A DNA stretch of 48,341 nucleotides, taken from Octopus bimaculoides. Lineage: Eukaryota. Shown here one piece after another: positions 23,901-46,700 of the stretch (position 1 is its first letter; each line of letters begins with the position of its first letter). The notes under the pieces were generated by a model that was not told the DNA's origin, searched no databases, and saw only the letters and a list, made by a program, of their open reading frames with translations. The DNA is taken from NCBI RefSeq assembly GCF_001194135.2, contig NC_069010.1:9200055-9248395 (forward strand). The letters are read 5' to 3'. A program made the translations under genes and the position numbers.

Positions 23901-25952
23901 AAGCCTGTTGTATATATATGTATGTGTGTGTGTGTTTGTCCCCTCACCATTGCTTGACGACTGGTGTTGGTGTGTTTATGTCCCCATAATCTAGTGGGGA
24001 CATGATATAAAGAGAGACCGATAGAATAAGTACTAGGCTTACAAAGAATAAATCCTGGGGTCGACTTCTACTAAAAGACCCTTTAAGGCACTGCTCCAGC
24101 ACGGTTGCTCTCAAATGACTCAAACAACTAAAAGAATAAAAAAGAATTTATATTTACCATATTTACTTGTATATACGTTGCCCCCACCTCACCCCGCCCC
24201 ANNNNNNNNNNNNNNNNNNNNNNNNNNNNNNNNNNNNNNNNNNNNNNNNNNNNNNNNNNNNNNNNNNNNNNNNNNNNNNNNNNNNNNNNNNNNNNNNNNN
24301 NNNNNNNNNNNNNNNNNNNNNNNNNNNNNNNNNNNNNNNNNNNNNNNNNNNNNNNNNNNNNNNNNNNNACTTAACAGTGCAGCTTATATACGAGTATATA
24401 TGTGTGTGTATGTGCATACGAGTTGGTGTGTCTCTCTCTATATATATATATACACTTTGAGCATGCACCATTTTGAGCGTGGCCGTTGCTAGTACCGCCT
24501 GACTGGCCTTCGTGCCGGTGACACGTAAAAGCACCTACTACACTCTCTGAGTGGTTGGCGTTAGGAAGGGCATCCAGCTGTAGAAACTCTGCCAAATTTA
24601 GATTGGAGCTTGGTGTTGCCATCCGGTTTCACCAGTCCTCAGTCAAATCGTCCAACCCATGCTAGCATGGAAAGCGGACGTTAAACGATGATGATGATGA
24701 TGACATATGAGTGTATGTATTTATATATATATATGTTTCTGCTCTTCCAGGATGAATTAGCCAGAGTGTTTGTAACTCTGTTTGATGCTAAACACCTCCT
24801 GTATCAACTGTTGTGGAATATGTTTTCTAAAGAGGTAAGTCATTGCATTCCTCATGGATTCTTTCTTTCGTTGATTGGTCAGCTTCAAAGAACTGGCCAC
24901 ACCATCTGATAATTCTTGGTTGCATGGCAGATATATTTGTTGGTGTAATCTCTATTGATGTGTTACATCTGTCAGCATGACATCTGCCGATGTTACAGGC
25001 ATAATTTGAACCCTGTTTCACAGGCTCACTTCAAATACAAGTCAGTGTGTTATACTCTGTGTTTGTGTTGATATCATACTTCAGCCAATATCTACTGTGG
25101 AGTACCTTGATCATTCTCTAGGGGAGAGAGTTCTTGCATAAATTATGATAAGCAGTTTCATTTAAATATGAACCCTCTGAATTAGGGATTGTTTTTGTAT
25201 GAAAGAATCAGAGACTGATCCCATTTGTTTGTTATTAAAATATTTAATATTGTAAACTAATTAATTGGTTGCATATTTTGTTGATTGTTGTCTAAACGAT
25301 GTTTTTGGTGGAAGAAGGGAATACTCAATATTCAACAAAATTCCCAAAATTGTATTTTTTCTCTTCTTGTTTCGATATATCAACACTGATTAGACTAAAA
25401 TAATTTAGATTGGAGCCTGGTGTTGCCATCCGGTTTCACCAGTCCTCAGTCAAATCGTCCAACCCATGCTAGCATGGAAAGCGGACGTTAAACGATGATG
25501 ATGATGCAAATAATTCACAGAAATATGCAAAGCTAAAACATGAATATTGTTTGGAAAACTTGAAAGAACCTTTGTAGAATATTGGACATTCCTTTCCTCC
25601 ACCGAACGCATCATAGATTTCTGCTCGTTTCATTGTGTATTTTGGAAAGCCCCATGGATTAAACTGAGTATTGAACCCTGCACTGTTTTTTTCTGATCTT
25701 TCAGGTTGAGATTGCTGACTGCATGCAGACCTTGTTTCGTGGCAACAGTCTGGCAAGCAAAATTATGGCTTATTGCTTCCGTTTCTATGGACAGAATTAT
25801 CTCCGCAGCTTGCTCAACCCACTCATTCAAGATATGATGGATATAGAAATACAAAACCCCAACTTGTCCTACGAGATAGATCCATCGAGGTGAGCCACGG
25901 CGATCTTTCTTTTTCTTTTTCTCTTATCCTTACTATTTCAATAAATGAAAGA

Positions 25953-25991
<39 letters not shown>

Positions 25992-28900
25992 CCGACTATT
26001 TCGCCAGGCTTGAATCAACCGAGAATATTGAGGAGAACAAGAAGAATCTTATGATTATTACTCAGAAGGTGTTCAATGCCATCGTTGGGTCTGCCTCCAG
26101 GTAAGATGCCATTTGTTCATCGTTCTTCCTTCTGAAATTTCTTCGACTTCTGCCTATAAGATAGACCCCTAAATATTTTCTTCAAAGGAAAGCAGTGAAT
26201 TTTTGCAGATAAGTTAGTCCTCTATGTATTTTCTTGAAACAAAATCATCAAATTTTACCAATAAGATAGTCCTATATTTTTATTTTCTTCAAATAACAAC
26301 TGGCTTCTTTTAGTCTCCATCTACCAGTTCCACTCACTAAGCTTTGCTCAGCTAGGGGCTGTGTGAGAAGACACTTTCCCAAGGTGCCATGCAGTGGGAT
26401 TGAACCTGAGACTACACAACTAGAAGGCAAGTGCTACTTACCCACACAACCATTTGGGTTTTGAACTTCAGGCTTAATAAACTATAAAAGAAGTTATATG
26501 TATACCTCAGAGTATTGACCAGGTCTATATTGAATGTTGTTATACATCACTGGTCATTGTTTTAGCTTTTGGATGACGCTGCACCCTACTGGCTAGGTGA
26601 GCAGGCCAACATCCAGCCTAGTCTCTTGTGGGGTTACTTATTTACAGCTAGGGGACTGGAGCACCATGGAATGAAGTGTTTTGCTCAAGAACACCATGTG
26701 CCACCCAGTCCTGAAATCAAACCAATGGGTGCAAGATTGTGGGTGCAACACCCTCATCAATAAGCCATGTACCTTCGAACACAGATTGGTAGATAGGTCT
26801 TTAGATATTTGAAAATGGTTGATGGCTACAGAGATCTCTGATGTTGGAATTTCACTGCAGCCATGTTTTATTTGGAGTAAAATCTAGCAAAATTCTTTCT
26901 CACAAGAAAGAAAAATGAATGAAAATGCATGTATCCCCTGTAAACAAAAGATTCATTCCCTGAAAACTATTAGAAACACTTGCCTCTGTGTGTGTAAAGT
27001 TTCACAAATAATCTCAAAATATCTCAGGCAAAAACTTTGTGATTTCTTGTTTTTAATGGAGAAAAATTGAATGAAAGCATTTCAGAGAATCAAAGATACC
27101 ACGTTGCAATGAAAGAAACTGAGGCTAAGAGTAAGAGAGAAAAAGTTATAAGGATCAAAAAGAATAAAAATGGTAAGCAAAGATGTAGAAAGAGGAAGAG
27201 CAAGACATGAAAAAATGTTATCTCAAAGTGAATTAAAATTGAATCTTCAATAATAAAAGAATCTAGAAGATCACATCTTAAACAAAAATATATTAAAATT
27301 AGAATTTCAAAGAATTTTCTAGACAGTGTAGCTTTAATAAATGCTTTCTATTACTAAAATTTACATATTTGTAACTAATTAATAAGCAGCTTTTGTTATT
27401 AGGGTATTGCTATTTGGTTTCATATCTGTCCATTTATCATCATCGATTTTATTGACTTTCATTTCAAGCGTTCAGCTTTTTTGTTCTGTTTTTTTTTTTT
27501 CTTCTTCTGCTTCTCTGTTGTGAAGTTGGTTATAATTTTTTGGAATGTTAATTTCATCTTCAGGAAATGAAGCATTTTGTTTGAAATATTTGCTTTGGCA
27601 CCACATTTCAGTTTCCTCTTGGACCATTGTCTTATTTCTGGGACCCAATTGGATTCAAAATATCAACTTTCTAAAGTTGATATTTCTAAACTAAATCTAG
27701 CCACACTTACCTCCCATGCCTTTATTATAACTTTTTGTTAAGGGATTGAAGTATTCTTTTAAATGCAATGCTTCTTTATTCACATTGTTTTGATATAATC
27801 ATGTATTATCTAAAAGCTTGTAGACTTTGAGATTTTCATGACCTGGCCTATGCTGGCGCCATGTAAAAAGCACTCTGTCCATTCTGTGGAGTAGTTAGGA
27901 AGGGTATCCAGCCATAAAAACCCTGCCTAAGCAGATAGCAAAGCATGGTGCAGTCTTCTGCCTAACCAGCACCTGTCAAAGCCATCCAACCCATGCCAGC
28001 ATGGAAAGCAGACATTAAATGATGATGACAATGAAATTGGTGATGTTAGTTTATTTTTAGAATGACATTGCAGGGTAGGTGTAAGAGGCTGGATCTGTTT
28101 AACTTGAAAATGAAAGAAATAGATTATTTGGGTCAGATATCTTGTTTCATTCTCATTATCCCTACTAAATGTGAGTAGCCAGAGGGAGCTCCTTTACAAT
28201 GTAAATCTGCTAACCCCAGCCTCTTTCCTCACGCCTTATCCCCAACTAACGCAAAGAAGCAGACCCCCACCAACTCCTGATTTCTAGAAATATGAGCTAC
28301 ATAGCAACCTCAACAGTGCAGCATGAAAAAGCACCCACCCAGTACTCTGTAATTTGCTTGGTATTAGGAAGGGCATCCAGCTGTAGAAACGATGCCAAAG
28401 CAGAGACTGGAGTACAATGCAGTCCTTGAACCAATCAGATCCCTGTTAAATTGTCCAACTTAACATGGAATATGGTCACTAAATGGTAAGGATGATAAGC
28501 AAACTACATTATGCCGACAGCAGTGATGGTGGTCTTAAATGGTTCAGTTAATAACTCTCATTTCTAATGTCTTTCAAGATTGTTTAAAGAATCCACTTTC
28601 GATTAAAGAAATCTTATTCCCTTTTGTCATTTACGATTTCCTTCCTCGTGTGCGATCTGTTACAATATATTTTTAAATGTTTCATTCCTGAATAAGCGAC
28701 TAACAGTCCGAAATATTGTCACTCACTGCAGACTTTCTCACTCTTTGTTACATGAACAGTTTTGTTTAAATAATTAATTTATGCACGTGTGTGTGTGTGT
28801 GTGTATCTAGATACATGTGAGTATATTATGTATCTATCCATGTATATATTTGTATGTGTGTGTGGGGGAGGATATTTGTTTATTTTCCATCAATTTATGC

Positions 28901-30267
28901 ATATGTCTATGATTCTCTGTTTCTGTATGTGTGTGTGTGTATGTGTGTATATAGATATATATTTATATATTTGTGCCTGGTGTGTATGTGTTTATGTGTA
29001 TAAATACATTTGTCTCTGACAGACAAAAGTTAACAACATTACTGTACTTTATTTTCCACAAATTTATGACCAGAGAAGATTTTTTACTGAAAGAACTGAC
29101 AGAGACATGCCAGGCTTATAGCATAAACCCCATTGGTATGTTGAACTGAGCAGAACCATTGAGAAATCTAGCCATGTTTGGATGTCTTTCTTCCTGTTTC
29201 ATTAATATCACATCAAAAATATAACCTCCAAGATATTGAGAAGTTCTTGAAGGCAGATTGCTTAAAAACCATTGTATTTATTCAGGTATAAGTCGCACCC
29301 CTAATTTGGTGTTAAATCTTGGTATAAACTTTTTCCCCCATCAAATTCAAACGTGATATTAGCTTTGCTCCATGTTAGAAATAGCAGCCAAATTTCCCTC
29401 AAACCACACTCTACTCTCTTATGTATGTATATATGTACGTATGAGCCAGTGAAGGAGACCTCTACATGGTAGCTAAACCTGGTAGAAATAGCAACTAAAT
29501 CTCCCTCAAATCACACCCTACTGTCTTGTGTATGTATATATGAGCCAATGAGGGAGACCTCTACATGGTAGCTAGACGTGGTAGAAATAGCAGCCAAATC
29601 TCCCTCAAATCACACCCTACTGGAAGGAAGACATTAAACGATGAGGTCACCATGTACCTTGCAAGCGAGAGTGGAGAAAGGGAAAACAATGGCTCACTCG
29701 ACTGAGTGGGAGTGTATTTAAGAGTGAAAGAAATGTGGCTTTATGCTGGATGTTGACCCTAAAGTATGATAGAGGGACAAGCATAGGTGTCTTGCTATAG
29801 ATGAGAAATTTGGTACAATATCAGTATTTACAGGAGAAATATATTTGGAGAGCTTCTTGAAAAACTAGACAGTAAACTGTGGAAAATACAGCACAATCAT
29901 GGCCTTAAACACTAAACACGCACAAGAGTATGGAAATGTATGTGTAAATTCATGTATGTATTGTAATTATAACAATATGTTTACTTATAGGAATATAGGT
30001 ACACTGAAAGGTCAGAGTGTGTGTGTGTGTGTGTGTATAATTATAACCAAGGAGAATGGAGTGAGCAAGTCTTTTTATTCCATTGATTTACAATTACTTC
30101 ATCAAGCATTGATCTCACGAGCATTACTTTATTATATATATATATATGTGTGTGTGTGTGTATGCAGGATTGCCCAAATGTCACAAAGATGTTACTAATT
30201 AATTTATTCTCTGTTTGAAATTTATGACACCTTAGCCCCAGATCCTGTATATACATGTGTGTATATT

Positions 30268-30300
<33 letters not shown>

Positions 30301-31707
30301 CAGGTGTGAAAATTCACATCATGTAAATTACAAATAACAAAAAATGTAATCAAAGCATATTAAAGTTTCAGACCCCTTTGAAACTTTTGGGTTGTCCCTA
30401 TATATATTACATACATACATATNNNNNNNNNNNNNNNNNNNNNNNNNNNNNNNNNNNNNNNNNNNNNNNNNNNNNNNNNNNNNNNNNNNNNNNNNNNNNN
30501 NNNNNNNNNNNNNNNNNNNNNNNNNNNNNNNNNNNNNNNNNNNNNNNNNNNNNNNNNNNNNNNNNNNNNNNNNNNNNNNNNNNNNNNNNNNNNNNNNNNN
30601 NNNNNNNNNNNNNNNNNNNNNNNNNNNNNNNNNNNNNNNNNNNNNNNNNNNNNNNNNNNNNNNNNNNNNNNNNNNNNNNNNNNNNNNNNNNNNNNNNNNN
30701 NNNNNNNNNNNNNNNNNNNNNNNNNNNNNNAAATTATTATGTATAATTAACCCTTTAAATGCTGTAATTCAGTTTATTTATTTATACTATTCCTTAGCTC
30801 CTAAGGGGCCTCTGATTATGTTTCTTTTGTTGTGTTCAAGTATCTAACTGGTGCTCTTTGGTTACGGCAATGAGGGTTCCAGTGTGGCAGCAAGCTGGCT
30901 GAAACGTTAGCACACCAGCTGAAATGTTTAGTGGTATTTCGTCCTTCTTTATGTTCTGAGTTCAAATTCCGCCGAGGTCGATTTTGCCTTTCATCCTTTC
31001 GGGGTCAATAAATTAAGTACCAGTTGCATACTGGGGTCGATCTAATCTATTGGCCCTCTTCCCCAAAATTTCGAGCCTTATGCCTAGAGTAGAAAACAAT
31101 GAGTGTTCCAGTGTGTAACTGGTACTTGTTTAATCGACCCCGAAAGGATGTAAAGCAAAGTCAATCTTGGTGGAATTCGAACTCAGAACATTGTACTGCT
31201 AAGCATCTCGCCCAACGTGTTAACAATTCCGCCATCTCGCTGCCCTAATATGGAAGTATATTAACAAAAGAAACACACAAGGTTTTATAATATTATTTAT
31301 ACTAAATTTAAAATCTGTGTCCCCAAAATGGGACACTGGCACCTAAAGGATTAATAATTTTTATTTCAAGAAATATCTTTCTTCAAATATTGTAATTGCA
31401 TCAAATATTTTTTGCCAAAGGTCTTTTAAATATATATATAAAGTGGGGGGAGGGCAAAAGTAGGCCTACAGTTGCTTCATGGGAGTGCAATGGTCTTTTC
31501 ATATCTGTGTTTCTGTTTTTTAAGCTAAAGTGATTCATAAGTTTGACTGAGGGATCCATGGGAGATGCCTAGGTCATTAGAAGACCCCCCCCTTTTTTTT
31601 TTGATTTCTGGGGATTTAGAGTGAATAAGCAACTGTATACCTACTTTTGCCCAATCCTGTACATGTCTATGTGTATATATGTATATACATATGTGTGTGT
31701 ATGTATG

Positions 31708-31753
<46 letters not shown>

Positions 31754-32021
31754 CACACGTGCATACACGCATATATATAAAATTGCATAAGAAAATTCTT
31801 AACCAATAACATCTTGTCAATTGTTTGTATTGTATGTGTGTGTGAGTAAATATGTTTGGTGAAGTGTCAGCGTGTATATGTATATTGTGTCTATATATGT
31901 ATATAAAAGTGTGTTTACATATGTCAGTGTATGTGTATATATATGTTTATATTTGTATATATCTATGTATGTGTGTAGGTATGTGTATGTATGTATGTAT
32001 GAGTGTGTGCATGTGTATGTG

Positions 32022-32073
<52 letters not shown>

Positions 32074-33303
32074 TACACACACATACATACAAGGTGATAT
32101 CAAATATTCCTGGACTAATTATACTTAAATAATAACTTCTTGACCTAAGTTTTAACCTCATCTCCTTTGAAATGGTCAGCTTCCGCAGCAATACCACAGG
32201 TCCCAGTGTTCCTGCCTTTTTTGGAATCCAGCCTGGAAGTCGATGACCTTCTATGATTCACTCTGGATCTCGACAACAAGTGTTAAAACAGCAACCTTTG
32301 AGCTACATTTTCATCTTGAGGGAGAGATGGAAGTGCACAGGTGCTAAATCTGACGAATAGGGCAGGTACAGAAGTGATACCATGTTGGTCCTGATGAGAT
32401 ACTGCTTTTGAGGCACCTGTGTCATACGAAACATCGACCCATTGTTTGTTGCTATAACTTGCCAAAGTGTGCTCAATGTCTCTGTAGCAGATTTCCCAAG
32501 TTGAACACAAAATTCCATGTTGGCTTTTTTCTTCCAACTTCCTGTCCATGACAAATGTTGCAGACTACAACAAACACGTGATCACAAAGACACAAATTTC
32601 ACAACTTGTGAAGTAAACACAGCAATGTCACTTGGCACACTGGCCCATAGAGGTCACTGCTAGCTCTCACTGCACACGCATGCAAACTGTGTGCTGCCCT
32701 CTGTTGACACCCTACAGAACTAGTCCAGGAACTTTTTTGATACCACCGTATATATAGAGGGTTATTCAAAGAAAAATAAACCGATTTCATTAAACAATAT
32801 TTTAATAATGGAAAGCAATAGAAAGCTCCAGCTTGGTCGCAAGTATTTACTCACAATCCACTTTTATTTCCTGTCTTACAAGTATTCAATGTGGCCACCA
32901 CCTGTAGCATGGGCAACATCAATGCAAAAAGAGAATTCCTCCCAGACACGTAGCAGCATATCACGAGCCACCGAGGACTTCTTTGGCCGTCTGGTCGAAT
33001 GCTTTATCCAAGTTTTTCCATTTCCCTTCTATTTCAATATCTTCTGGAATCGTCTCAAGCAAAGCAAATTTATTCTTTAGTTCCATAAAGAACTTGCTTT
33101 TGATATGCTGCTATGTGTCTGGGAGGAATTGTCTTATCACATTGATGTTGCCCGTGCTGCAGGTGGTGGCCACATTGGATACTTGTAGGACAGGAAATAA
33201 AAGTGGATTGTGAGTAAATACTCGTGACTTAGCTGGAGTTCTCTATTGCTTTTCCTTATTAAAATATTGCGTAAAGAAACCGGTTCATTCTTTTTAATAA
33301 CCC

Positions 33304-33350
<47 letters not shown>

Positions 33351-34039
33351 NNNNNNNNNNNNNNNNNNNNNNNNNNNNNNNNNNNNNNNNNNNNNNNNNN
33401 NNNNNNNNNNNNNNNNNNNNNNNNNNNNNNNNNNNNNNNNNNNNNNNNNNNNNNNNNNNNNNNNNNNNNNNATTTGATATAAGCCAACAATGTATAATCT
33501 CTTTCCTCTTCTCTCTTCTGTCTCTCCTTGTACCCCCCCCCCTCGGCCTCTTTCATTTACCGACCCTAAGCAGCCCCAAGAACATTGTTGTTTTTGTTTA
33601 CTGTTATGATCATTGTTGTTGTTCTGACATTTATTGTTTTGTAGTCCTTGAGTGCCCATGTGGCAAATAAATTACATAAATCTCCTCCTCCTCATCATCG
33701 TCATCATCATCGTCATCGTCATCCCTCTCCATTATTATTTGAGGCTGGATATTAGCCAGAGAAGTGAGGAGACTGGAAGACCAAGACGACAATTATTCCT
33801 TTGGTGATTGGTGCACTTGGCACAACAAATGAAAAGACTGGAATTGAGTCTTGCATTGTTGACCTGCAGGAAAGGGACCATTTTATATTCTGAAAGTGGT
33901 ACTTAATTTATTGACCCTGAAAGGATGAAAAGCAAAGTCAACCTCGGTGGAATTTGAACTCAGAACGTAAAGACAGATAAAATACCGCTAACGTGTGCCC
34001 ACGTTTCTGCCAGCTCATCACCTTAATAATAATAATAAT

Positions 34040-34073
<34 letters not shown>

Positions 34074-34254
34074 TGTTATGTAATAAAATCCAGATTGATT
34101 TAGTTTATTCAACGGAATAATATTTTAAGTGTATGTCTGTCTTCTTTTCGAGTTCAAAGTGAAAAAAATTTAGAGAAATTCAAAAATTTCAACTCAGAAG
34201 AAGTAAAAGAGTGATATTTCATAATAATAATAATAATGTTACGTAGTTTATTCA

Positions 34255-34290
<36 letters not shown>

Positions 34291-36477
34291 CCTTCTGGAA
34301 GTTCTTCACTGACCCAATCTGTTACTAACTTCACTTATTTCCTTTCTTTTCACACATATTTTGTACCAATGCCTCCCCACCTATCCTTGCTCTTTTTCTC
34401 TTCTTGATCTCCACACCGGTTTCGGTTCTGAAATCATCTGCATGTGTGTGTCACTGTCAAGTTTTTATGTGTATATCTGTCTACATCTATCAATGTCTCT
34501 CTGTCTGTAAATATATACAAATGCAAGGGACAATCTCTCTTACCATCTCGCAGCACACCCTATCTGGTTTCTGTGACTGAAGAGGAGATAACCACTCCGA
34601 AATGCTTGCATCTCAGTGTGGGTAGATGGTGCCACGAGTCGAATTTTGGTGTATTTACACCATTTGTCCACAGCAAGAAATTTTCTCCATCAAAAGACAC
34701 TACAAATGACTTTCTCGTATATATATATATAGGTGCAGGCAAGGCTGGGTTGTCAAGAAGATCACTTTGTAGCCACAGAGTTTTGGGTTCAGTCCCACTA
34801 CATGGCACCTTGGTCAAGTGCTTTCTACCATAGTTCTGGGCTGACCAATGTCTTCTGAATGAATTTGGTTGACAGAATCTATGCAGAAGGCTGTTCTCTG
34901 TGTGTGTGTGTGCATGTGTGCATCCGTGTGTGTTTGTGTTTGTTTCCCCACCCCCACAGCTTGGACAACTGGTGTTGATTTATGTTCCCGTAACGTAGCA
35001 GTTTGGCAAAAGCAACCGATAAAATAAGTACTGGGTTTGTTTTCTTTTTGACTAAAAAACCCTTCTTCAAATACATCTGGGTTCTAGAGTCCTGATAAGC
35101 TGTTGATAAACTATCCCCCCCCCCTCTCTCTCACTCTCTTTCGCGCTCTCTTCTATCTCTCTCTCTTCTCTTTATCTCATTATCATCTTTCTTTATGTAA
35201 ATCTACACAAGATGTTTCCCTGCTTCTTTCTCTCTTCAATCCATTTCTTCACTCACTATAAATTGTTTTAATCTTTACACTTTCTCTGTCCCTGCCCCCT
35301 TCTGCTGCCCTGTCCAGACTATAACCCTTATAAACAGTTCATAGAATTTAAAAATCATTCTATAATTACCATGAGCTCTTACTCTTCAAACAGATTCTAA
35401 AGACATCATATTTTCTTTTACTCTTTGTCAAAAGACAAACAGACATTTGTCCCTTTGCCTGTCTTGTGTATCCCTTGTGAACATATTTCCATGGCACCCA
35501 CACAGAAACACATTCCCAATGTTCTTCAACCATTTGGGACTTATCAAAGAAAAGCTTTATATTACTTCGAATGTATGAAACAAGAGTTAACTGAACGTCT
35601 AGAAAGAAGCATGTTTAGGACAGACTTATGGAAAGGTTTTGTTCAGTTAAAAAGGTTTAATGTCTGAGGCTATAGTAGAAGACGCCTACCCAAAGTTTCA
35701 TGCAGTGGGACTGAACCTGGAACCATGTGGCTGGAAAGCAAATTTCTTACCACACAGCCATGCCTGCACCTACGAAAATAATGTCTTTGACAGTCAAAAG
35801 AGTGGAACACTTTTCTCTTTGCAGAAATTTGCTCCATTCAACCTTTTTGCTTTTATAGTTTTTGCTGTTGACTTATTTCTTGTGACATGAGAGAATGAAG
35901 AAAAGATATCTCTGTGAGAGACCCCCATTAAGACAGGACTAAGTCCTCCACCACCCCTGACCTTTGACCTCTGTCTTGCTCTCGTCTTGTCTGTGAACAT
36001 CTGGAGTATCTTGAGAACATCTGGAGTGTCTTGTTTAAACTCTTTCAAATTGATTCTGTAAAACTTGTTTCCTTTCAGCTCTTTCAAAATTATACTTTTG
36101 TTTCAACTACTTTCTCTCTTCCTTCCTTCCATCCTTCTTTCCTCACTTTCTTTCTGCACCCCCCTCTCTCTTCTCTATCTTACATAAACTTCTCTCCTTC
36201 CTCTCACCCACAAACTCTTCCTCTTTCTCTCTATCCTCTCTCCCTCTCACACCTCTCTCTCTCTCTCTCTCTTTCTTGTATGTATATCAACCCCGCCATA
36301 TCTATTTCACCAGATTTCCCCCCAAGCTGTGTACAATGTGTAACTGTCTCCACTGCGCCATCAGTCTTCGTTTTCCCCCCGACAGCATTCTGGCCACTGG
36401 CACCGTCATCTTCCTGCGGTTTTTCAACCCAGCATTAGGTAAAACTTCTGTCCTCCTCATATACATATACATATATA

Positions 36478-36558
<81 letters not shown>

Positions 36559-37258
36559 TGCCATAATAATAATAATAATAACTGATAAGATGAGGTAAAA
36601 AAAAATCTTTTAAAAAACACAAACAACCTCCCACTCATTCCATGCCCTTTATATATAGACTTTCTATTTCCCCCCTCTCTTCTGCTCCACCCCCACTTCT
36701 CACTAACCCCTCCCTACTCCTGACCTCGCCCCCTGCTGCTATCTCTGCTCCTCCCCTTTCTGCACTCCCTTTTCTAACAAGCTGCCAACAGAGTCGGACA
36801 AAATGTTTAGCACCATTTCTTCCAGCCCTTCATGTTCTGAGCTCAAATGCCACTCGGGGTGGGTGGGGTAATTTTTGCCTTTCGTCCTCTTTCGGGTATC
36901 AGTGAGAGATATAAGGACCTGTCAAGTATTGGGGTTGGGGGTACAATGTTATCGTCTTGTCCTCTTTTCCCTCAAAATCACAAACCCTTCATCCTTGTTC
37001 TTCCAAGGACTTTGTAAACCCATCTAAATGTGATAACTTCCTCTGCTGACCCTCATCAGCTCACAATCGTTATGCATAGTAGTTTCCATGCAATTTATAA
37101 CTGCAACCATCTTTTTAAAAATATAATTTAGGTCCTTCATTCTGACCACGAGTACTTTCTTTAGGGTTTCTTGCTAGGCCAGCCATCAGCCGGATTCCTT
37201 TAGTCACCATCTGACAAGGCAACTGGAAACACACATAATCAACCACAAGAAGGCGACC

Positions 37259-37294
<36 letters not shown>

Positions 37295-37604
37295 TCACCA
37301 CCGCTGCCACCATCTAGTGATGGTGGTGGGGGTTAAGTCTATGATCTTCTCGCATCTGTTGTTGCTTCTGGTGCTGCTGCCAATGTTGTACAACTGCTCC
37401 CATCTCCATAGTTACACAATTACCCCCTTCCGTCTCCACCCTCGTTCCTTCCGTTTGCAGAAGAAACGGTTCTTGTTGTTGTTGTTGTTGCTGTTCTTCG
37501 TGTTTGCTTTTGTTTGTTTTCTTTCTCGTTTCTTTGCTTTTGTTGTTGTTGTTGTTGATTGATTTCCTGTAGGCACATACTCGCTTTTGAAATATATACA
37601 CTTA

Positions 37605-37667
<63 letters not shown>

Positions 37668-38692
37668 ATGTATACACATACACACACACACACATACATA
37701 TATATATATACATACATATGCGCACACACACATATATAAAATGGTGTATTAGCTACAGTAGTATATGAAACTTTGATTTACTGACATTGTCAGCTTCCAG
37801 AAAAGGTAGAACAATCGCTTGGCAATAATTGGATCCAATTCAAAATACGGGGTGATTAAACTCGAGACTCGAGAATCCCCTAGTGACAAGGGAACAGATA
37901 TATGCACATGTTTCTACCTCGATGAATACCATCAGCACAGCTCTTACCCGACTTTATCTCCTGCAGAATTAGACACACAGATATGATAGAATTAGTAGAA
38001 ATCTACTCACAGGCATGTGTGTATAACTTATATACATGTATAAATCTTATGCTTGTTTCAATCATTGGACTGCGGTCATGCTGAGGTACAGCCTTGAAGG
38101 GTTTATAGTCAAACAAATTAACCGAATCAACCCCAGTTTGGTACTTCTCCTATCACTTTCTTTTGCTGAACTACTAAGCTATGAGGATGTAAACAAACCA
38201 ACACCATTTGTCAACCAGTAGTCATGAACAAATACACATCCACTGGCCCGTCCCCCCCCCCTCCACATACATATACACATATATGTAATGCATGTGTGCA
38301 ATTTTATTTGTGTGTGTGTGTATTATGAAGGGCAGCATGCAGTCATACAAGACCACTACTAGCACTGGGGGTCAGCACAGCCCACCAGATCCGGCCAAAC
38401 TGTCCAACCCATGTCACCTCTAGAAATGGACGTTAGATGATAATGGTCATTTTATCCTTCCATATTTATTTATATATATCTCATCATCATCATGTAACGT
38501 CCACCTTCGATGCTGGCATGGGTCAGACAGTTTGAGCAGAGCTGGTGAGCCAGAAGACTTCCCCCACACCCCAGTATCTGTTTTGGCCCTTCCTAACACC
38601 AACCACTCCACAGAGTGGAGCGAGTACTCTTTACGTGGCACCAGCAGGGTCACCAAGTATGTAGATGTATGTATTCATACATATATGTATAT

Positions 38693-38726
<34 letters not shown>

Positions 38727-39977
38727 TCCTAACCACTGCCTCCCCCCCCACTGTTTGGCTGACTCCATCATTAAGTTTTGGGAGATTTCCATTGGTTTGT
38801 TGTGTTTGTATTTTCATTTCTTTGTTTTGTTTTTTTTGTTTCGTTCTTTCCAGTTTCTGATATTTTCTTCTTTTCTTTTTACTTGTTTTGTCATAAATTA
38901 TTATTTTTTGCTTGTCAGTTTAATTCTCTGTGTTACCTGTTACGGTGGTGGTGGTGATGTTGGGTGGTGGTGGTCAAAGACACACAGACAGACAAAGAAA
39001 CAGATTGTGATCCAATCATCTCTGTTGGTTGATGGATACTGTAAAAGACAGACAGGTAATAGAAAGACAGATGCTATGGCTGTGTGTGTATGTGTTTATT
39101 TATATACACACATACACACACACACGCACAGATTGATGGCAAGACAGATACATGGAGGATGTAACGGCTAGAAAGACATGCTATGGTGAGTGTGTGTGCA
39201 TGTGTTTCTCTCTCTCTCTATATATATATATATATTAATCAAAGTGTACAGCATTACATATCCGTTATGGCTGATCTTACCGATTGGAGTTCAACAGAGT
39301 GTAGGTAACAGTCTGATTATGTAACCCTGCACTCATTAGAGGTAGCCATTATGGAATCCTGATGGCTTATGGACTCTTAGACAGCTTACACACACACACA
39401 CACTCATATATTTGGGTGCAGGATGGCTGTGTGGTAAGAAGTTTGTTTCCCAACCACACAGTTCCAGGTTCAGTCCCACTGTGTGGCACCTTGCGGAAGT
39501 GTCTTTTACTGCCGCCTCAGTCCGACCAATACCTTGTGAGTGGATTTGGTAGACAGAAATTGAAGAAAAGCTTGTGTGTGAGTTTGTGTGTGTTTGTCTC
39601 CCACTTCTATTTAATAACTGGTGTTGGTGTGTTTATGTCCCCAGCATGGCTGCAGTCTAATGACTGAAACTAGTAAAAGATAAAAGTTTTATGTGTGTGT
39701 GTGTGTGTATGTATATATATGTATATACACACACATATATACAGGGAGAGGCAGACAGACAATAGAGAGACAGAAAGACAAATAGATGTTTTTTTAAAAT
39801 TTTTTGAAAATATTTTTTCTTCATTTTAAATTTTATTGAATATTTTTTTGCATGTTTTGTTGTTTGTTTCTAGTTTTTTTTTTCTTTTGCTTCTGAATCT
39901 CTCTGGCCCCTACCCCCATCCACTTATTTTCTCTCTCCATCTCTTTTCCTCCCCCCTCTTTCCCATTGTTAGCCACT

Positions 39978-40048
<71 letters not shown>

Positions 40049-40165
40049 TTTTACTGCTGATAGGTGTTGTTGTTGTTGTTGTCTGCTCGTGTATGTTGTT
40101 GCCATTGTTGTTGTGATTGTTGGTAATGTACCTTGTCTGTCTGTTTGTCCGACTGCCTGTCTGTT

Positions 40166-40197
<32 letters not shown>

Positions 40198-40708
40198 ATC
40201 AAATAAGCACATACACACACACACACACAAGTGCATTCCTCCTCTTTCTTCACTTCTTGCACCTCCATGACCACCACCACCCACTAACAAGCATCACAAC
40301 CACCAACCATGCAACCATGCAACCAACACCATCATCACCATCATCACCAACACCCCCACCACCTACACTACCATCTCCACAATCACCACCACCACCACCA
40401 CCACCACCACACTGTGATCCTCCTCTCCTCCACGTGCTGCTGTCTCCGTCCACAGGTTCCCCGCCAAACTGCGAAGTATGTGTAATTGCCTCTCCCAAGT
40501 GGTAGGTCAACGCTTCCAACAAAGTACGTTTGATGCTGTCTGGACTGTGATCGGCACCGTTATATTTTTACGTTTCATCAATCCCGCAATAGGTAAAACA
40601 CGCATTTCACCTTTCCTCTTTATATTTTAGCTTTTTGCAATGAACTTTTTTGCGTTTTTTTCTTTTTTGTTTACACTTTGCCCATTTATTTTCTCTTTTC
40701 TTTTTCAT

Positions 40709-40749
<41 letters not shown>

Positions 40750-43700
40750 TTGACTCTATATCTTCTGGAGGAATTCCCTCAATCCTTTATATATTAACCA
40801 AAATGCAGTAGATTGACAGGATTATTTTTTTGAAACTGTTGAAGACACATGAGATGTCGAAATATCGTTCGCTAGGTGACAATGGCACTCTTCTTTTAAT
40901 TTTGACTAATAATGATAGTAATAATCCTTTCTACTAAAGGCACAAGGCCTGGAATTTGGAGAGAGAGGGTCCAGTCAAGGATATTGACCCCAGTGTTTCA
41001 CTACTACTTAATTTATTGAGCTTGAAAAGATGAAAGGCAAAGTCGACCTTGGCGGAATTTGAACTCAGAATGTTAAGATGGACAAAATGTTGCAAAACAT
41101 TTTCCCCAGCATGCTAACGACTCTGCCAGCTCACTGCTTTAACAATAATAATAATCATAATGATTTCAAATTTTGGCACAAGGCCAGCAATTTCGGGGGA
41201 GGGGGCAAGTTGATTACATCAATTGGTATTTAATTGATCGACCCTGAAAAGACGAAAGGCAGAGTTGACCTCGGCGGAATTTGAACTCAGAATGTAGAGA
41301 TGGAAGAAATACTGCTAAGCATTTTGCCCAGTGTGCTAACGATTCTGCAAGCTTGCAGCCTTAATGATAATGATGATGATAATAATAATAATAATGATAA
41401 TAATAATGATAAATTGTTTTTTGTTTAAAGTAATCTGTTATTTTCATTTTTAATTTCAAATCAATTTTATATTAATCGTTAAATAATTTAGTTAACTACT
41501 TGGTTTTATTAACCTTTCACTCACCCATTCTCCCCACCCCCTCATCTCCACCAATCAACACCTTCGTACATGTCACATGTGCCACCTCCGTGACGAGGCG
41601 CCCTTGGTTGTGTTGTGAATTGTAAGAAGTAAATCTCTGATCAAACCTTACCGGTTTGGTTTCAAGTCTCACTCAACTCTTCCCCCTCCTCTTCCTCTTC
41701 CCATCATTTCAAATGCTGTCTTATGCCAAGATACATCTTGAACTTTACTAATGATGCCTTATGTCAACATATGTCTTAAACTACTTATTATGCCAAGATA
41801 TATCATAAAATACTTATGTCTTATGCCAACGTATGTCATAAATTATGCCTGACATCTTATACTAAAACATGTCATAAGATACTTATGAAGTCTTATACTA
41901 AGATATGCCATAAACTACTTGTGTCTTATGCCAAGTTATGTCATAAACTACTACTTATGACATTTTATGCTAAGATATATCATAAATTCTACTTATGATG
42001 TTTTACTCTAAGATACGCCATATATTCTACCTATGATGTCTTATGCCAATATGTCGTAAGCTATCATAAAATCTACTTATGATGTTTTAGATATATCATA
42101 AATTCTCCCTGTGATATCTTAAGCCAAATATGTCATAAATTACTTATGACAGCTTATGCCAAGGGTTGACCCAGTCAGCATAGTGATACGAGAAGCTCTA
42201 TGGCGTGCAAGGTAACTTCCTCTGTTGGGGGTTCCACTTCCAACAACCCTTCCCGCATTCATTTCATTCTGCATCCACCAACCTTTACGTTGATGCCACT
42301 TATGATTGTTTGAGACAGGCATGAATGTCACGGTTCCTCCCTTCACTGCTCATACTTCCTACCCCACCTCATCCCAGCAGTTGCCTCACTTTCTGAGGAA
42401 AAGGGTTTGCAAGGGAGAAAGAAGAAAGGGACTGTGAAGCCCCCATAAGGGACAACAAGCAACAGGAAATCTCTCTCCTTATTTTGGTGTCCTTAAACGA
42501 GAGCAAATAGAAGTTGGGGTTAGGGCTCCCTACCTTCTGCTTGTTACCCCTTCCTTATGGGAATGATACTGGGATCAGCAAATGGACAAAGAGTTAAATA
42601 CCCCAGTAAATTACTGCTACAAGCACCTCATTGACTTTTCAAGCTCTCGTGTCCCAGAACCTCTTATAATCCAGAGGGACTTCAAATCCTTGCACCCTCC
42701 TCACACAGCACAGTATTAATAAACTTGTGTCATTTATAATTAATGTGCAGCTCCCTGCACATTCTTTTAATTATTTAAGTAAATTTAACCTTTTTGTTTA
42801 ATTTGAAGTTTGTCCAGAATGGCTTTGGAACCAAAGGGTCCAGAAAACCAATGTTGTTCCTGTAATTTGCTGAAGCCCAGTTCTTTTTTTTAGTTCAAAT
42901 CCTAGACAGCATGAACTTCACTTACCATACCTCCTGGGGCCATCTACAGTAATTTAATTATCTGATGTTAATTGCCTGTGGAATAGATTTCCTAAACGGG
43001 TACCTGTGATACACAAGCGATAATTAACCTGTTACCTTTCCACTCACACACACACACACACACACATCCCACTTTTGTCCCTAACTCCCACCCTCTGCCT
43101 CAACCACCCACTCTGTCTAGTCCCCCATCTCAACCCTCTCCCTCTAAATTCCTTGTTCTTGACTTTCACTCACCTCCCCACCCTTCATCCCGAACCCTCA
43201 TGCCTCTCCCATTCAAGTACCCCCACCCCATTCCTGTTCCACACGCTCCCTGTGCNNNNNNNNNNNNNNNNNNNNNNNNNNNNNNNNNNNNNNNNNNNNN
43301 NNNNNNNCCCCCCCCATCGACATTCTCCAACCCGCCCCTGTACATATCTCTAGTTCCACTCCTGCTCTGTCCCTTATTTCCTGTTCCCTCCACCCAGATG
43401 CTCCCCGCCCCACTTCCCCACATTCCCCCTAGCCCTCAGGGTTCTCTGTCTCCACACTTCTCGCTCCTCATCCCCCACCCCCAAGCCCCTGTCAGTTACC
43501 AGAAAGAAGTTAAACTGTCCTTAATTAGCAGCAGCAGCAGCAGCAGCAGTAGACAGCCGGTTGTGTGTGATTGCCAAACCAGTTATTCTGGGTTCAAATC
43601 TGACCACGGCAATAACTTCTGGTTGTTTTCGGGCCTCCACCTTACCCACCAATTCCTCCCCTGCCCCAACAGACGTGCCTCCCCCCATATTATATGTTGT

Positions 43701-46700
43701 TCCCTTCACAATTTCCACATGACTCCTAACCCCGACCCCCACCATTGCAGCTGTTCCACCCTCCCGACTCCTTAAGAAGCAGCTGCAGTGACTCTTGACT
43801 CTGGATTACCAATGGAAAGAGGTATTAATGAAGTTTTAACAAGATGCCCCTTTAATTACCCCTTTAATTACCCCTCCCTACTTAACCTCCAGCTTCACGT
43901 CACCCCTTATTCTTCTGTCCAACTCAAGGTATTTCTTAAAAAAAATACACGTAATTAGTTTTAATCAAATTCATTACTTAACTCATTTATTGTTTTAATT
44001 AACTCATGTATTTAATCAATTTTGCTAATTAATTTGTACTGTAATTAAAACACGTGTCTATGAACTCATTAAACTTTCTATTAGGGGTACCGTAAAGTAA
44101 TGTCATATTCTCGAGCAAATAGTCTGATGTCATACCACAAGAGGATCTGCACCAAAGTACCAAGGACTTGTCCACTGCGCAGTGGCCATCTCATGGTACC
44201 TCAAGAATAAAACGGTGCATTCGACAATTTGCTACTGTTTGCAGGAATGAACGAACACCTTTGCTTAATTGAATTGTAACAGGTGAAGAGAAGTGGGTAG
44301 ATTATACCAATATTAAATGTAAGAGGCAGTGGCTGTCAGCAAAGAAAGATCCAGTCCCAAGACCCTAACCAGATTTTGCTGTGCGTTTGGTAGACTACTC
44401 TCTGTATTGTTTATGTTGAATTAGTGGAACAAGGGAAGAGTATTACCACAGGATTTTGTTATCGACAACTTGAATGTGTCAGTCAAGTTTTGCTTGAAAA
44501 GACAACCAGTTTCAGTCCACCGAAAAGGTGTCATCCTGTCGTCGCAGGGTAATTCAAGGCCACATTCAGCAAAGATAGCCCAAGAAAAGATAAATTCATT
44601 AGACTGGGAAACTTTACCTCATTCTCCCTCCTCATCAGACCTAGCATCATCAGATTTTCACGGTTTGGGTTACTTGAACACTTTAGCTAAGGGAGGTCTT
44701 CAGGAACGCACCAATGTCTCTGGTGAGTTGATCTAAATACATTGTGTTTGGATGACCTGCTTGACTGCGGCCATGCTTTGGTATCCATAGCAATAGGTCA
44801 CTTGCCAGTTCTTCTTTAGTTTGCCAGAAATGACCTGCAGAGTGCAAACGTTTTGCCCTTATAATGGTGGAAACGGGCAGGAGATCTTCATACAGCTGTT
44901 TCTTGGTGGGATGAGTTCTCCAAGACATGTTTAAGACTGCTCTTAACATTTGGGTATAAGTTCCATCTAGCTGGGATTCCAGTTTTTTTGTTAAGCCTCC
45001 AAATATAAAAGGACTGACTCTACTGTTTTGGGGAAAGAATTCCTCTGAAGGTTGTCTCATTGGGTTGTTTTCCAGACAATGTCCACTTTGTTTAGGGCTG
45101 ACCATACTTTGGTTGTCTGGCTTTTTGCATCTTTCTCAGTTGAGTCTATTTCGAAACTGAGGCACGTGAAATTGACTGATTGGGTCTCCACCGAGTTTGG
45201 TGATGAATCGTTGTCGTGAGCCTAAAACCAAATGAACATTTTACCAATATGGAGATGACAATCCAGACATTTTTCTCTTCTAAACAATCTGATTGTTTTT
45301 TTCTTTGTCTGAGGAATTAGAAAATTGGTTTCTGGATGGGAAAATTGAATTGCTAATGATGGCAATTAAATTTTGAAGGAATAAATATATTTACATGTTT
45401 TATGCTGTTTTGAACTCGTTATATGAAATACGACATTATTTTCTGGTACCCTTAATAATTAATTTACTCATTTGTTTAATCAATTAATTTGCTAATTAAA
45501 TTCTTTTTTTTTTTAAACACGTGTTTATTTTAAAAAGTAATTTCATGTTTTTGATAATTTGTAATGTTTAAAAAGAAAATTTTAATTAGTCAAATTGTAA
45601 TTAATTTTTTAAAAGAATATAATTTTGTTTGATTAATAATTTATTTACTATTGTTGTTTTCTAATCTAAATTTTAGTTTCAGCAGACTTAGGGAGGAGAA
45701 AGGCTTGCCAACTATGACCATCCCAACTTTGCTTAAAGAAATGGTATTGTGGACTCAATTGTGTCCTTCCCTATTCGAGTCTGTCGGGATATTTGGGTGG
45801 TATTTCTAGCAAGTTCAGTGAAGTGGTGTGTGGTGGTGTGGAGGGGGTAGTTGGATGGGGAGAGGCAAGAGGTGTAATGGGGTGGATGGAATAGGGTGAT
45901 AGGTAGATTAATGAGGTGGAAGGGTAATAGGGTAGCAGAATCAGTGGGAAGGGGATTATGGAGTGGTGGGCAAGAGGAGACAGTGAGGTCCCATATCTAC
46001 CTGTACCCCTTTATATTCATTAGTGGTGATCATGGGGATGCATTAGCTTAGCTTTACATCTGGGGAAAGGAAAAGGGTCCAGAAAGTGCCCACTCATATC
46101 AAAAGGATCGAAAGTCCTTCCCAAGCCATAGGCTCATAAAACCCAGTTTCCAGATTTTGTGCACTCCCCCTGGATGGGATGCCAGTCTGTTGCAGAATTA
46201 CTCAGTTTGGGCAGATGAGTGGACTGGGGCAAAGTGAAATGAAGGGTTTTGCTCAAGAACACAATGCATCACCCAGTCCAGGGATTGAAATCACAATTGT
46301 ACAGCCTTGAATGCAACACCCTAACCACTGATCCACAGGTTTCCATACCAGTCATATAATGAGGGACAATATCTCTTTCACTAACATAAGTGGGCCTTGT
46401 TGTTTTTGTTTCGCTGGGTTCCCCCACCCTCTCTCCTCCACTAATTCATCTCGGATTGTTTGATTTTTTTGTCCTAAATCTGTTGTTGCTGACGTTGTCT
46501 TTTGGCTTTTCCCAGTGTCTCCATACGAATCAGGAATCATTGATCAGGAACCTACGCACCGTGTCAAACGTGGCCTAACCCTGATGTGCAAAATCATGCA
46601 AAACATTGCCAACCATCTGCTCTTCACCAAGGAGCAACACATGCGAGCGTTTAACGACTTCTTGAAGACAAACTTTGAGGCTGGCCGCAAGTAATTATTT

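What the first reader, a model, noticed from the sequence alone, without database searches (positions are those of the whole stretch)
36314..40592. Tandem duplicated, mutually exclusive exons encode the catalytic FLR segment of the NF1 RasGAP domain
Seen: two paralogous exons, A (125 nt; [41 protein letters not shown]) and B (137 nt; [45 protein letters not shown]). Both have AG acceptors, the same donor AG|gtaaaac and phase 2-1. The upstream exon ends in phase 2 and the downstream exon starts in phase 1, so including one keeps the frame while including both or neither shifts it. By my count 22 of 41 aligned residues are identical and 14 of those 22 use different codons, which indicates an old duplication with both copies under protein-level selection rather than a pseudo-exon or assembly echo. 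Established: the FLR arginine (human R1391) supports the arginine-finger loop, and this region contacts Ras. Inference: the animal makes two neurofibromins with different GAP cores. I know of no description of mutually exclusive GRD exons in NF1.
Basis: partly seen in the sequence, partly recalled or inferred. Interest (0 to 1): 0.93.

Follow-up and report, generated by a model that had tools for sequence, protein, structure and literature searches.

The report
Two alternative neurofibromin GAP-domain exons
This invertebrate NF1 (neurofibromin) gene carries two old, side-by-side copies of the exon for the Ras-contacting "FLR" helix pair. Both copies are kept intact by selection in at least eight other lineages, so the animal very probably makes two versions of this Ras off-switch by using one exon or the other.

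Summary
The whole window is NF1 on the + strand. Exon A (36314-36438, 125 nt) and exon B (40456-40592, 137 nt) are paralogues, 23/41 residues identical. Both have AG acceptors and AG|GTAAAAC donors, and they sit between a phase-2 upstream exon and a phase-1 downstream exon. A alone or B alone reads through; both or neither gives an early stop.

The new evidence is comparative. The same ordered pair, a short ~41-residue copy followed by a 45-residue copy with a WTVI insert, occurs in eight other lineages from independent assemblies. Against the closest relative the introns do not align, yet exon A differs by 13 synonymous and 1 non-synonymous change (dN/dS 0.016). That matches exon B and a constitutive exon.

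Exon A is therefore a selected coding exon, not a relic or an assembly echo. The duplication is old: synonymous sites are saturated between lineages.

Mutually exclusive use follows from frame logic; no RNA data could be reached. FLR is identical in both copies. They differ in the preceding helix (including a SPRED1-contact residue), the loop, and positions after FLR. No paper describing this was found. It is a new member of a known kind (tandem-duplicated mutually exclusive exons).

The parts
26008..26100 (+). Upstream constitutive NF1 exon ([30 protein letters not shown] + 2 bases 'AG'); ends in phase 2
   Evidence: Read. tblastn to human and insect NF1. Orthologue in L009 is 84% nt identical, dN/dS 0.014.
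26101..36313 (+). Intron, 10.2 kb, the longest in the window; not alignable with the closest relative
   Evidence: blastn of window vs L009 finds only exons. Tandem repeats listed.
36314..36438 (+). Exon A, 125 nt: one base, 41 codons, one base. This is the short type, equal in length to the human segment 1357-1397. It encodes helix, turn, and the FLR helix.
   Evidence: Orthologues in L009, L003-8, L010-12, L016, L013, L017, L020. 13 synonymous and 1 non-synonymous difference vs L009, P=9e-8. 88.7% nt island in an unalignable intron.
36439..40455 (+). Intron between the two alternative exons, 4.0 kb, with (AT)35 21 nt after the exon A donor and (ACC)n ending 45 nt before exon B. If it were spliced so that A joins B, the frame shifts.
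   Evidence: The equivalent intron is only about 170-1700 nt in other lineages.
40456..40592 (+). Exon B, 137 nt: one base, 45 codons, one base. This is the long type, with a 4-residue insert (WTVI) just before GTVIFLRF.
   Evidence: Orthologues 80-98% identical in nine lineages. 19 synonymous and 2 non-synonymous differences vs L009. 35 nt of upstream intron are also conserved.
40593..46515 (+). Intron, 5.9 kb
46516..46690 (+). Downstream constitutive NF1 exon ([34 protein letters not shown]...AGRK); starts in phase 1

Best explanation
Exons A and B are an ancient tandem duplicate of one NF1 exon, and they are used as mutually exclusive alternatives.

**What the exon encodes.** It encodes a helix-loop-helix of the RasGAP catalytic core, equivalent to human residues 1357-1397. 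In human NF1 that segment carries the FLR motif (L1390/R1391), which touches Ras switch II and stabilises the catalytic pocket. It also carries S1363-H1366, which are part of the SPRED1 contact patch.

**How exclusivity works.** The upstream exon ends in phase 2, the downstream exon starts in phase 1, and each alternative exon has a length of 2 mod 3. Only transcripts with exactly one of the two are translatable. Transcripts with both or neither meet a stop within 9-17 codons and would be removed by nonsense-mediated decay.

**The result.** Two neurofibromins share the arginine finger and the FLR motif. They differ in the helix before FLR (residue 1363 is S in every B and V/T/I in every A), in the length of the inter-helix loop (4 residues longer in B), and in two positions after FLR (FFNPAL vs FINPAI).

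**Shown:** paralogy, frame logic, conservation of both copies with dN/dS about 0.015, the age of the duplication, and fold compatibility of both isoforms.

**Inferred:** that both are spliced into mRNA and used exclusively, and that the isoforms differ in GAP kinetics, Ras-family preference or SPRED recruitment.
For: **Anatomy and frames**
- Sequence read and translated.

**The same pair elsewhere**
- The same two exon types occur in the same order, with AG...GTAA sites, in independent assemblies:
  - L009 (A 40/41, B 43/45 residues identical);
  - L001-L008;
  - L010-L012;
  - L017;
  - L020;
  - L014 and L019, where position 1 holds an A'-type copy.
- All B exons are exactly 137 nt. Position-1 exons are 125 nt, or 131-155 nt by predicted acceptors. 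All are 2 mod 3.

**Selection**
- Window vs L009: exon A has Sd 13, Nd 1, dN/dS 0.016, P(neutral) 9e-8.
- Exon B has dN/dS 0.015 and the constitutive upstream exon 0.014.
- Introns are unalignable, while exon A is 88.7% identical over 142 nt.

**Orthology groups**
- Identity is A-A 0.77, B-B 0.87 and A-B 0.63, with type-specific signatures.

**Each type suffices on its own**
- L018 has only the short type between the flanking exons.
- L015 has only B, fused to the upstream exon.

**Structure**
- AlphaFold models of both spliced GRDs have pLDDT above 90 across the exon.
- The helices are 180-196/198-219 in A and 180-196/202-223 in B.
- The A-isoform model matches NF1 GRD 6OB2 with TM 0.84.

**Residue roles**
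- Taken from PMC7437355.
Against: - No transcript evidence for either exon was found. The protein collection held no spliced mollusc-type NF1 ORFs. Junction-pattern scans of the metagenome contigs gave 0 hits for both A-downstream and B-downstream. Use of A, its tissue pattern and strict exclusivity therefore remain untested.
- No conserved intronic docking or selector element, and no consistent RNA pairing, was found that would actively enforce exclusivity.
- The intron between the copies is long enough to be spliced in every lineage, at 170 nt or more, so steric exclusion is unlikely.
- The catalytic FLR residues do not differ between A and B, so any functional difference is unproven.
Confidence: 0.82

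Rival explanations
1. Exon A is a dead relic of an exon duplication, a pseudo-exon that is never or only accidentally spliced. Only exon B makes neurofibromin.
For: B is closer to the general animal consensus (B vs human 69%, A vs human 59%). B is also the more slowly evolving copy (dN 0.039 vs 0.146 for L003/L017). No RNA evidence for A was found.
Against: Exon A has 13 synonymous and 1 non-synonymous difference against L009, while the surrounding intron is unalignable. A keeps an intact ORF, AG/GT sites and the 2 mod 3 length class in at least eight other lineages. One lineage (L018) has only the short type. RNA evidence was equally absent for B, so that absence is uninformative.
Confidence: 0.03
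2. Both exons are coding and used exclusively, but the two proteins are biochemically equivalent. The pair would be retained by regulatory subfunctionalisation, for example different tissues or stages each depending on one exon's splicing signals, and not by different GAP or SPRED properties.
For: [11 protein letters not shown] and most core residues are identical in A and B. Single lineages manage with one type only (L015, L018). The AlphaFold models are nearly superimposable in secondary structure.
Against: Type-specific residues have been held for a period long enough to saturate synonymous sites. Examples are S vs V/T/I at 1363, QRFQQ vs LRFPxD, the WTVI insert, and INPAI vs F/YNPxL. This is more than equivalence predicts. 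One such residue sits in the SPRED1 contact patch, and others sit next to the Ras-contacting L1390/R1391.
Confidence: 0.25
3. The pair serves mainly as a dosage valve. Regulated co-inclusion or double skipping produces frameshifted, NMD-targeted mRNA that tunes the neurofibromin level, and only one exon is used for the protein.
For: Both-in and both-out transcripts carry early stops in every lineage, because all lengths are 2 mod 3. The intron between the copies is spliceable, at 170 nt or more.
Against: A poison exon does not need amino-acid-level conservation. Both copies have dN/dS about 0.015.
Confidence: 0.07
4. The duplicate is an assembly artefact, an echo of one exon.
For: None beyond the fact that the two exons are similar.
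Against: The copies are only 59% identical at nucleotide level and differ by a 12-nt indel. The same pair occurs in independent assemblies, including hundreds of runs of one species (835 contigs for P0090).
Confidence: 0.01

Closest known systems
Mutually exclusive exons that arose by tandem exon duplication (a general class described for many animal genes, for example ion channels, tropomyosin, FGFR2 IIIb/IIIc) - from my own knowledge
   Same: Adjacent paralogous exons of similar length and identical phase. They encode the same structural element. Both-in or both-out gives a frameshift, so exclusivity can be enforced by reading frame plus NMD.
   Different: The gene. No NF1 or RasGAP-domain example was found in five literature searches. 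RNA-level exclusivity is not yet demonstrated here.
Vertebrate NF1 exon 23a, a cassette exon that inserts 21 residues in the GRD (type I/II isoforms)
   Same: Alternative splicing alters the same GRD segment. The 21-residue insertion lies inside the stretch encoded by exon A/B: the 2839-residue chain is offset by +21 from query position about 44. PMC7437355 describes the insertion as central in the GRD, close to the KRAS site, and associated with reduced GAP activity.
   Different: Exon 23a is an include-or-skip cassette that adds a loop. Here a whole helix-loop-helix is swapped for a paralogous one. The two events are independent in origin: exon 23a is not a duplicate of its neighbour, which I state from my own knowledge.
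Dscam1 / 14-3-3zeta / MRP1-type mutually exclusive splicing, driven by docking-site and selector RNA pairing
   Same: A tandem array of alternative exons between constitutive exons.
   Different: There are only two copies. No conserved intronic block was found. No consistent duplex signal appeared between candidate docking and selector regions: z ranged from -2.2 to +1.9 with no agreement among species.
Human neurofibromin GRD (PDB 6OB2, 6V65, 1NF1)
   Same: The spliced peptide matches at E=1e-50 with 62-66% identity. The arginine-finger motif FRGNS and FLR are present, and the A-isoform model superposes with TM 0.84.
   Different: Human has a single exon-coded version of residues 1357-1397, split over two exons at Q1370/V1371. 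The animal here has two alternative versions in one exon each.

Membership tests
Neurofibromin (NF1) RasGAP-related domain | Best sequence match is NF1 and not other RasGAPs | tested here: met
   NF1 GRD E=1e-50, against IQGAP 1e-15 and p120GAP/SynGAP 1e-12; about 25 exons collinear with a full-length insect NF1.
Neurofibromin (NF1) RasGAP-related domain | Catalytic signatures: arginine finger (FRGNS) and the FLR motif | tested here: met
   [11 protein letters not shown] in the exon at 25705-25889. FLRF is present in both exon A and exon B.
Neurofibromin (NF1) RasGAP-related domain | RasGAP fold | tested here: met
   pLDDT above 90 over the GAP core for both isoforms. TM 0.84 to 6OB2 chain B.
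Tandem-duplicated mutually exclusive exons | Adjacent exons that are paralogous to each other | tested here: met
   23/41 residues identical, reciprocal tblastn about 1e-10, no exon between them.
Tandem-duplicated mutually exclusive exons | Same splice phase, with only single inclusion keeping the frame | tested here: met
   for the window; all copies in all lineages are 2 mod 3.
Tandem-duplicated mutually exclusive exons | Both copies maintained by purifying selection on the protein | tested here: met
   dN/dS is 0.016 for A and 0.015 for B; both are conserved islands in unalignable introns.
Tandem-duplicated mutually exclusive exons | mRNAs contain one or the other exon, not both or neither | not testable with these tools
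   No spliced mollusc-type NF1 sequence for either exon in the searchable collections.
RNA-pairing (docking/selector) controlled mutually exclusive splicing | Conserved intronic complementary elements next to the constitutive and alternative exons | tested here: not met
   no conserved intronic blocks beyond 35 nt or less at the exon edges; duplex energies are not consistently better than shuffled controls.
Vertebrate NF1 exon 23a cassette | A 63-nt include-or-skip exon that inserts 21 residues after Q1370 | tested here: not met
   No such insert is present. The variation here is a swap of paralogous 125/137-nt exons.

The most novel reading that the evidence does not exclude
Neurofibromin may carry an ancient binary switch that is conserved across deeply diverged lineages, with synonymous sites saturated between them. 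The lineages are probably several molluscan classes and possibly further lophotrochozoan phyla.

Choosing exon A or B would swap the helix hairpin that holds both the Ras-contacting FLR motif and part of the SPRED-contact patch. That would give two Ras-GAPs with different catalytic efficiency, Ras-family preference or membrane recruitment. It would be a convergent counterpart of vertebrate exon 23a, reached by a different splicing mechanism.
Probability: 0.35. Interest if true: 0.8.

Novelty: new member of a known kind. Interest (0 to 1): 0.66.

Why it matters
NF1 is a central Ras off-switch and a human disease gene. Its only well-known catalytic-domain isoform difference is the vertebrate exon 23a insertion.

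A second, independent and much older way of diversifying the same GRD segment would show that tuning this helix pair is a recurrent evolutionary answer to a need for two kinds of neurofibromin.

It would also provide a natural pair of GRD variants, conserved for a very long time. Comparing them could reveal which non-catalytic positions around FLR and the SPRED patch set GAP rate or partner choice. That bears on how missense variants in human residues 1357-1397 are interpreted.

In practice, gene models and orthology pipelines for molluscs need both exons annotated. A model that includes both or neither would look like a frameshifted gene.

Tried and rejected
1. **Transcript evidence.**
   - Two protein searches with spliced up1-A/B-dn1 queries returned only genomic exon ORFs and arthropod-type NF1. 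There was no spliced mollusc-type sequence for either A or B.
   - A third search with a 41-residue A-type alignment returned nothing because of the word index.
   - Degenerate junction patterns for A-dn1 and B-dn1 in the metagenome contigs gave 0 hits each.
   - All of this is uninformative and does not count as negative evidence.
2. **Taxon identification of the related loci.**
   - Searching run and sample accessions in papers linked only SAMN18200486 (L013), to a South China Sea cold-seep metagenome (PMC9357000).
   - The guess that the SRR6063xxx series is the Crassostrea gigas resequencing project PRJNA394055 could not be verified.
   - I therefore do not name phyla as established.
3. 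**An RNA-structure mechanism.**
   - There are no conserved intronic blocks between lineages.
   - There is no consistent duplex signal between candidate docking and selector regions.
4. **Polymorphism in the heavily resequenced species.** 2 of 13 amino-acid variants fall in the exon part of the ORF, against 4.2 expected. This is not significant (P=0.16).
5. **A bootstrap NJ tree** of the 41-residue exons timed out. It was replaced by within-type and between-type identity.
6. **Long ORFs in the introns** have no Pfam match.
7. **Rejected ideas.**
   - U2/U12 incompatibility: both donors are GTAAAAC.
   - Steric exclusion: the A-B intron is 170 nt or more in every lineage.


Full report
**1. 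What is in the window**

The whole 48-kb window lies inside one gene on the + strand.
- A full-length insect neurofibromin (P0180) aligns collinearly in about 25 pieces from window position 2457 to 47228.
- The spliced peptide around the finding matches the human NF1 GAP-related domain (PDB 6OB2) at E=1e-50. Other RasGAPs (IQGAP, p120GAP, SynGAP) score 1e-15 to 1e-12.
- The arginine-finger motif FRGNS lies in the exon at 25705-25889.

**2.

| Feature | Exon A | Exon B |
|---|---|---|
| Coordinates | 36314-36438 | 40456-40592 |
| Length | 125 nt (41 whole codons) | 137 nt (45 whole codons) |
| Acceptor | AG | AG |
| Donor | AG\|GTAAAAC | AG\|GTAAAAC |

- The upstream exon (26008-26100) ends with two bases of a codon. 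The downstream exon (46516-46690) supplies the last two bases of a codon.
- Splicing in silico gives open frames for A only and for B only. A+B gives a stop 17 codons into B, and skipping both gives a stop after 9 codons.
- A and B share 23 of 41 aligned residues, 15 of them with different codons. Nucleotide identity is 73/123.
- There is no third copy.
- B's four extra residues read WTVI directly before GTVI. This looks like an internal 12-nt duplication.

**3.

A protein search returned short ORFs called on raw genomic contigs that read through single exons. Fetching those contigs showed the same gene neighbourhood in other organisms.

Lineages with the pair, always with the short copy upstream:

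| Locus | Content |
|---|---|
| L009 | Closest relative; A 40/41 and B 43/45 residues identical |
| L001-L008 | One heavily resequenced species; ORF P0090 seen on 835 contigs |
| L010-L012 (and the related L016, A only on a 1.6-kb contig) | A and B |
| L017 | A and B |
| L020 | A (42 residues) and B |
| L014, L019 | A more consensus-like short exon (here called A') at position 1, B 170-240 nt downstream |

- Every B is exactly 137 nt and has the WTVI-type insert.
- Every position-1 exon has a plausible in-frame acceptor and a length of 2 mod 3. Lengths are 125 nt, or 131-155 nt by predicted acceptors.
- The 'exactly one' frame rule is therefore conserved everywhere.

Two informative exceptions:
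- L018 has only the short type between the flanking exons.
- L015 has B fused without an intron to the upstream exons.
- Each type therefore serves as the only version in some lineage.

**4. Selection**

Between the window and L009 the introns are unalignable. blastn recovers only the exons, with exon A at 88.7% over 142 nt. That is higher than the two constitutive exons upstream, at 79.6% and 84.2%.

Nei-Gojobori counts, window vs L009:

| Exon | Synonymous | Non-synonymous | dN/dS | P (neutral) |
|---|---|---|---|---|
| A | 13 | 1 | 0.016 | 9e-8 |
| B | 19 | 2 | 0.015 | 9e-11 |
| Constitutive upstream exon | 13 | 2 | 0.014 | 9e-8 |

- Between the more distant lineages synonymous sites are saturated, while proteins stay 68-98% (A) and 80-98% (B) identical.
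- Within-type identity (A-A 0.77, B-B 0.87) exceeds between-type identity (0.63). Type-specific signatures are shared across lineages.
- The duplication therefore predates these splits, and A and B are two orthology groups.
- A evolves faster than B (dN 0.146 vs 0.039 for L003/L017).
- The pseudo-exon and assembly-echo explanations are excluded.

**5. Mechanism**

Shown:
- Only single inclusion is translatable, in every lineage.

Not found:
- No conserved intronic element between lineages.
- No consistent docking/selector duplex.
- Both donors are ordinary GTAA sites.
- The intron between the copies is long enough to be spliced, at 170 nt or more.

The best-supported mechanism is therefore frame incompatibility with removal of aberrant products by NMD. 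Ordinary splice-site competition or trans-acting factors probably contribute as well. That second part is inference.

**6. What the swap changes**

- By alignment to human NF1, the exon equals residues 1357-1397.
- PMC7437355 reports that R1391 forms a salt bridge with RAS E63, and that L1390 contacts residue 61.
- The same paper reports that R1391A lowers GAP activity 400-fold, and that S1363-H1366 are part of the SPRED1(EVH1) interface.
- A and B are identical at FLR and at GTVIFLRF. They differ consistently at four places:
  - residue 1363: S in all B, V/T/I in all A;
  - the end of the first helix: QRFQQ in B, LRFPxD in A;
  - loop length;
  - the two positions after FLR: F-I-NPAI in B, F-F/Y-NPxL in A.
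- AlphaFold models of the spliced domain are confident over the exon in both forms (pLDDT above 90).
- Both models show the same helix-loop-helix. B's extra residues lengthen the connection: helices 180-196/198-219 in A, and 180-196/202-223 in B.
- The A-isoform model superposes on NF1 GRD with TM 0.84.
- 'Two GAP cores' is thus better phrased as one catalytic machinery in two conserved scaffolds. Whether rate, substrate choice or SPRED binding differs is open.

**7. Comparison with what is known**

- The architecture is that of tandem-duplicated mutually exclusive exons, a well-known class. All the genomic criteria are met. The RNA criterion is untestable here.
- It is not the vertebrate exon 23a event. 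However, the 21-residue 23a insertion falls inside the same segment. PMC7437355 links it to reduced GAP function. Two lineages therefore appear to have evolved alternative splicing of the same GRD element independently.
- Five full-text searches found no description of mutually exclusive NF1 exons or of mollusc NF1 splicing.
- Automatic isoform models in public databases may already contain both versions. That could not be checked.

**8. Limits**

- No RNA data could be reached.
- The organisms behind the related loci could not be named. Only L013 was traced, to a cold-seep metagenome. The oyster guess for L001-L008 is unverified.
- The window's own species is unverified.

**9. Verdict**

- The feature is real.
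- It is a new member of a known kind of system.
- It is of clear interest to the NF1/RasGAP field, and it is testable at once with existing RNA-seq.

Noticed in passing
window 40537-40560 (exon B) and all B-type exons in L003, L009, L010, L014, L015, L017, L019, L020: B's 4-residue insert reads W-T-V-I directly before G-T-V-I. It looks like an ancient 12-nt internal tandem duplication (GTVI to WTVI+GTVI), fixed in every B copy.
   Followed up: partly
L018 10342-10466 and L015 1808-2155: Two lineages lack the pair. L018 has only the short (A') exon between the flanking exons. L015 has B fused without introns to the upstream exons. The L015 contig ends 176 nt after B, so a copy downstream of B cannot be excluded there.
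   Followed up: partly
L013 916-966 and 1057-1122: In the cold-seep metagenome contig, the 5' part of the A-type exon with its acceptor region is present twice about 140 nt apart. ORF P0151 contains RRFPAKLQTMCHCLDQ twice. This is a recent local partial duplication or an assembly feature.
   Followed up: no
window 36459-36528, 39980-40045, 40322-40410: Microsatellites sit very close to the alternative exons: (AT)35 starts 21 nt after the exon A donor, (ATT)22 lies upstream of exon B, and (ACC)n ends about 45 nt before the exon B acceptor. The three introns around A and B (10.2, 4.0 and 5.9 kb) are the longest in the window.
   Followed up: no
window 36314-36438 and L009 10105-10229: In the window and its closest relative, exon A has two extra cysteines ([14 protein letters not shown]) where other A copies have KLR[VT]MCHCL.QV. 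The positions equivalent to human R1362 and Q1370 are changed to C.
   Followed up: no
window 40421-40455; L003 10112-10137 vs L010 3959-3986: Short intronic stretches directly upstream of the alternative exons are conserved where the rest of the intron is not: 35 nt before B in window vs L009, and about 25 nt before A in L003 vs L010. They may be branch-point or polypyrimidine signals, or splicing-regulator sites.
   Followed up: no
human NF1 numbering 1370/1371, equivalent to window exon A/B codons 14-15: The vertebrate exon 23a insertion site, and an insect intron (seen in read-through ORFs P0012 and P0015), fall at the same point inside the segment that is a single exon here.
   Followed up: partly
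tool behaviour: The word-indexed protein search found no candidates for a 41-column alignment, although its members occur verbatim in database proteins found earlier (P0071, P0079, P0080). Very short alignment queries seem to fail in that tool.
   Followed up: no
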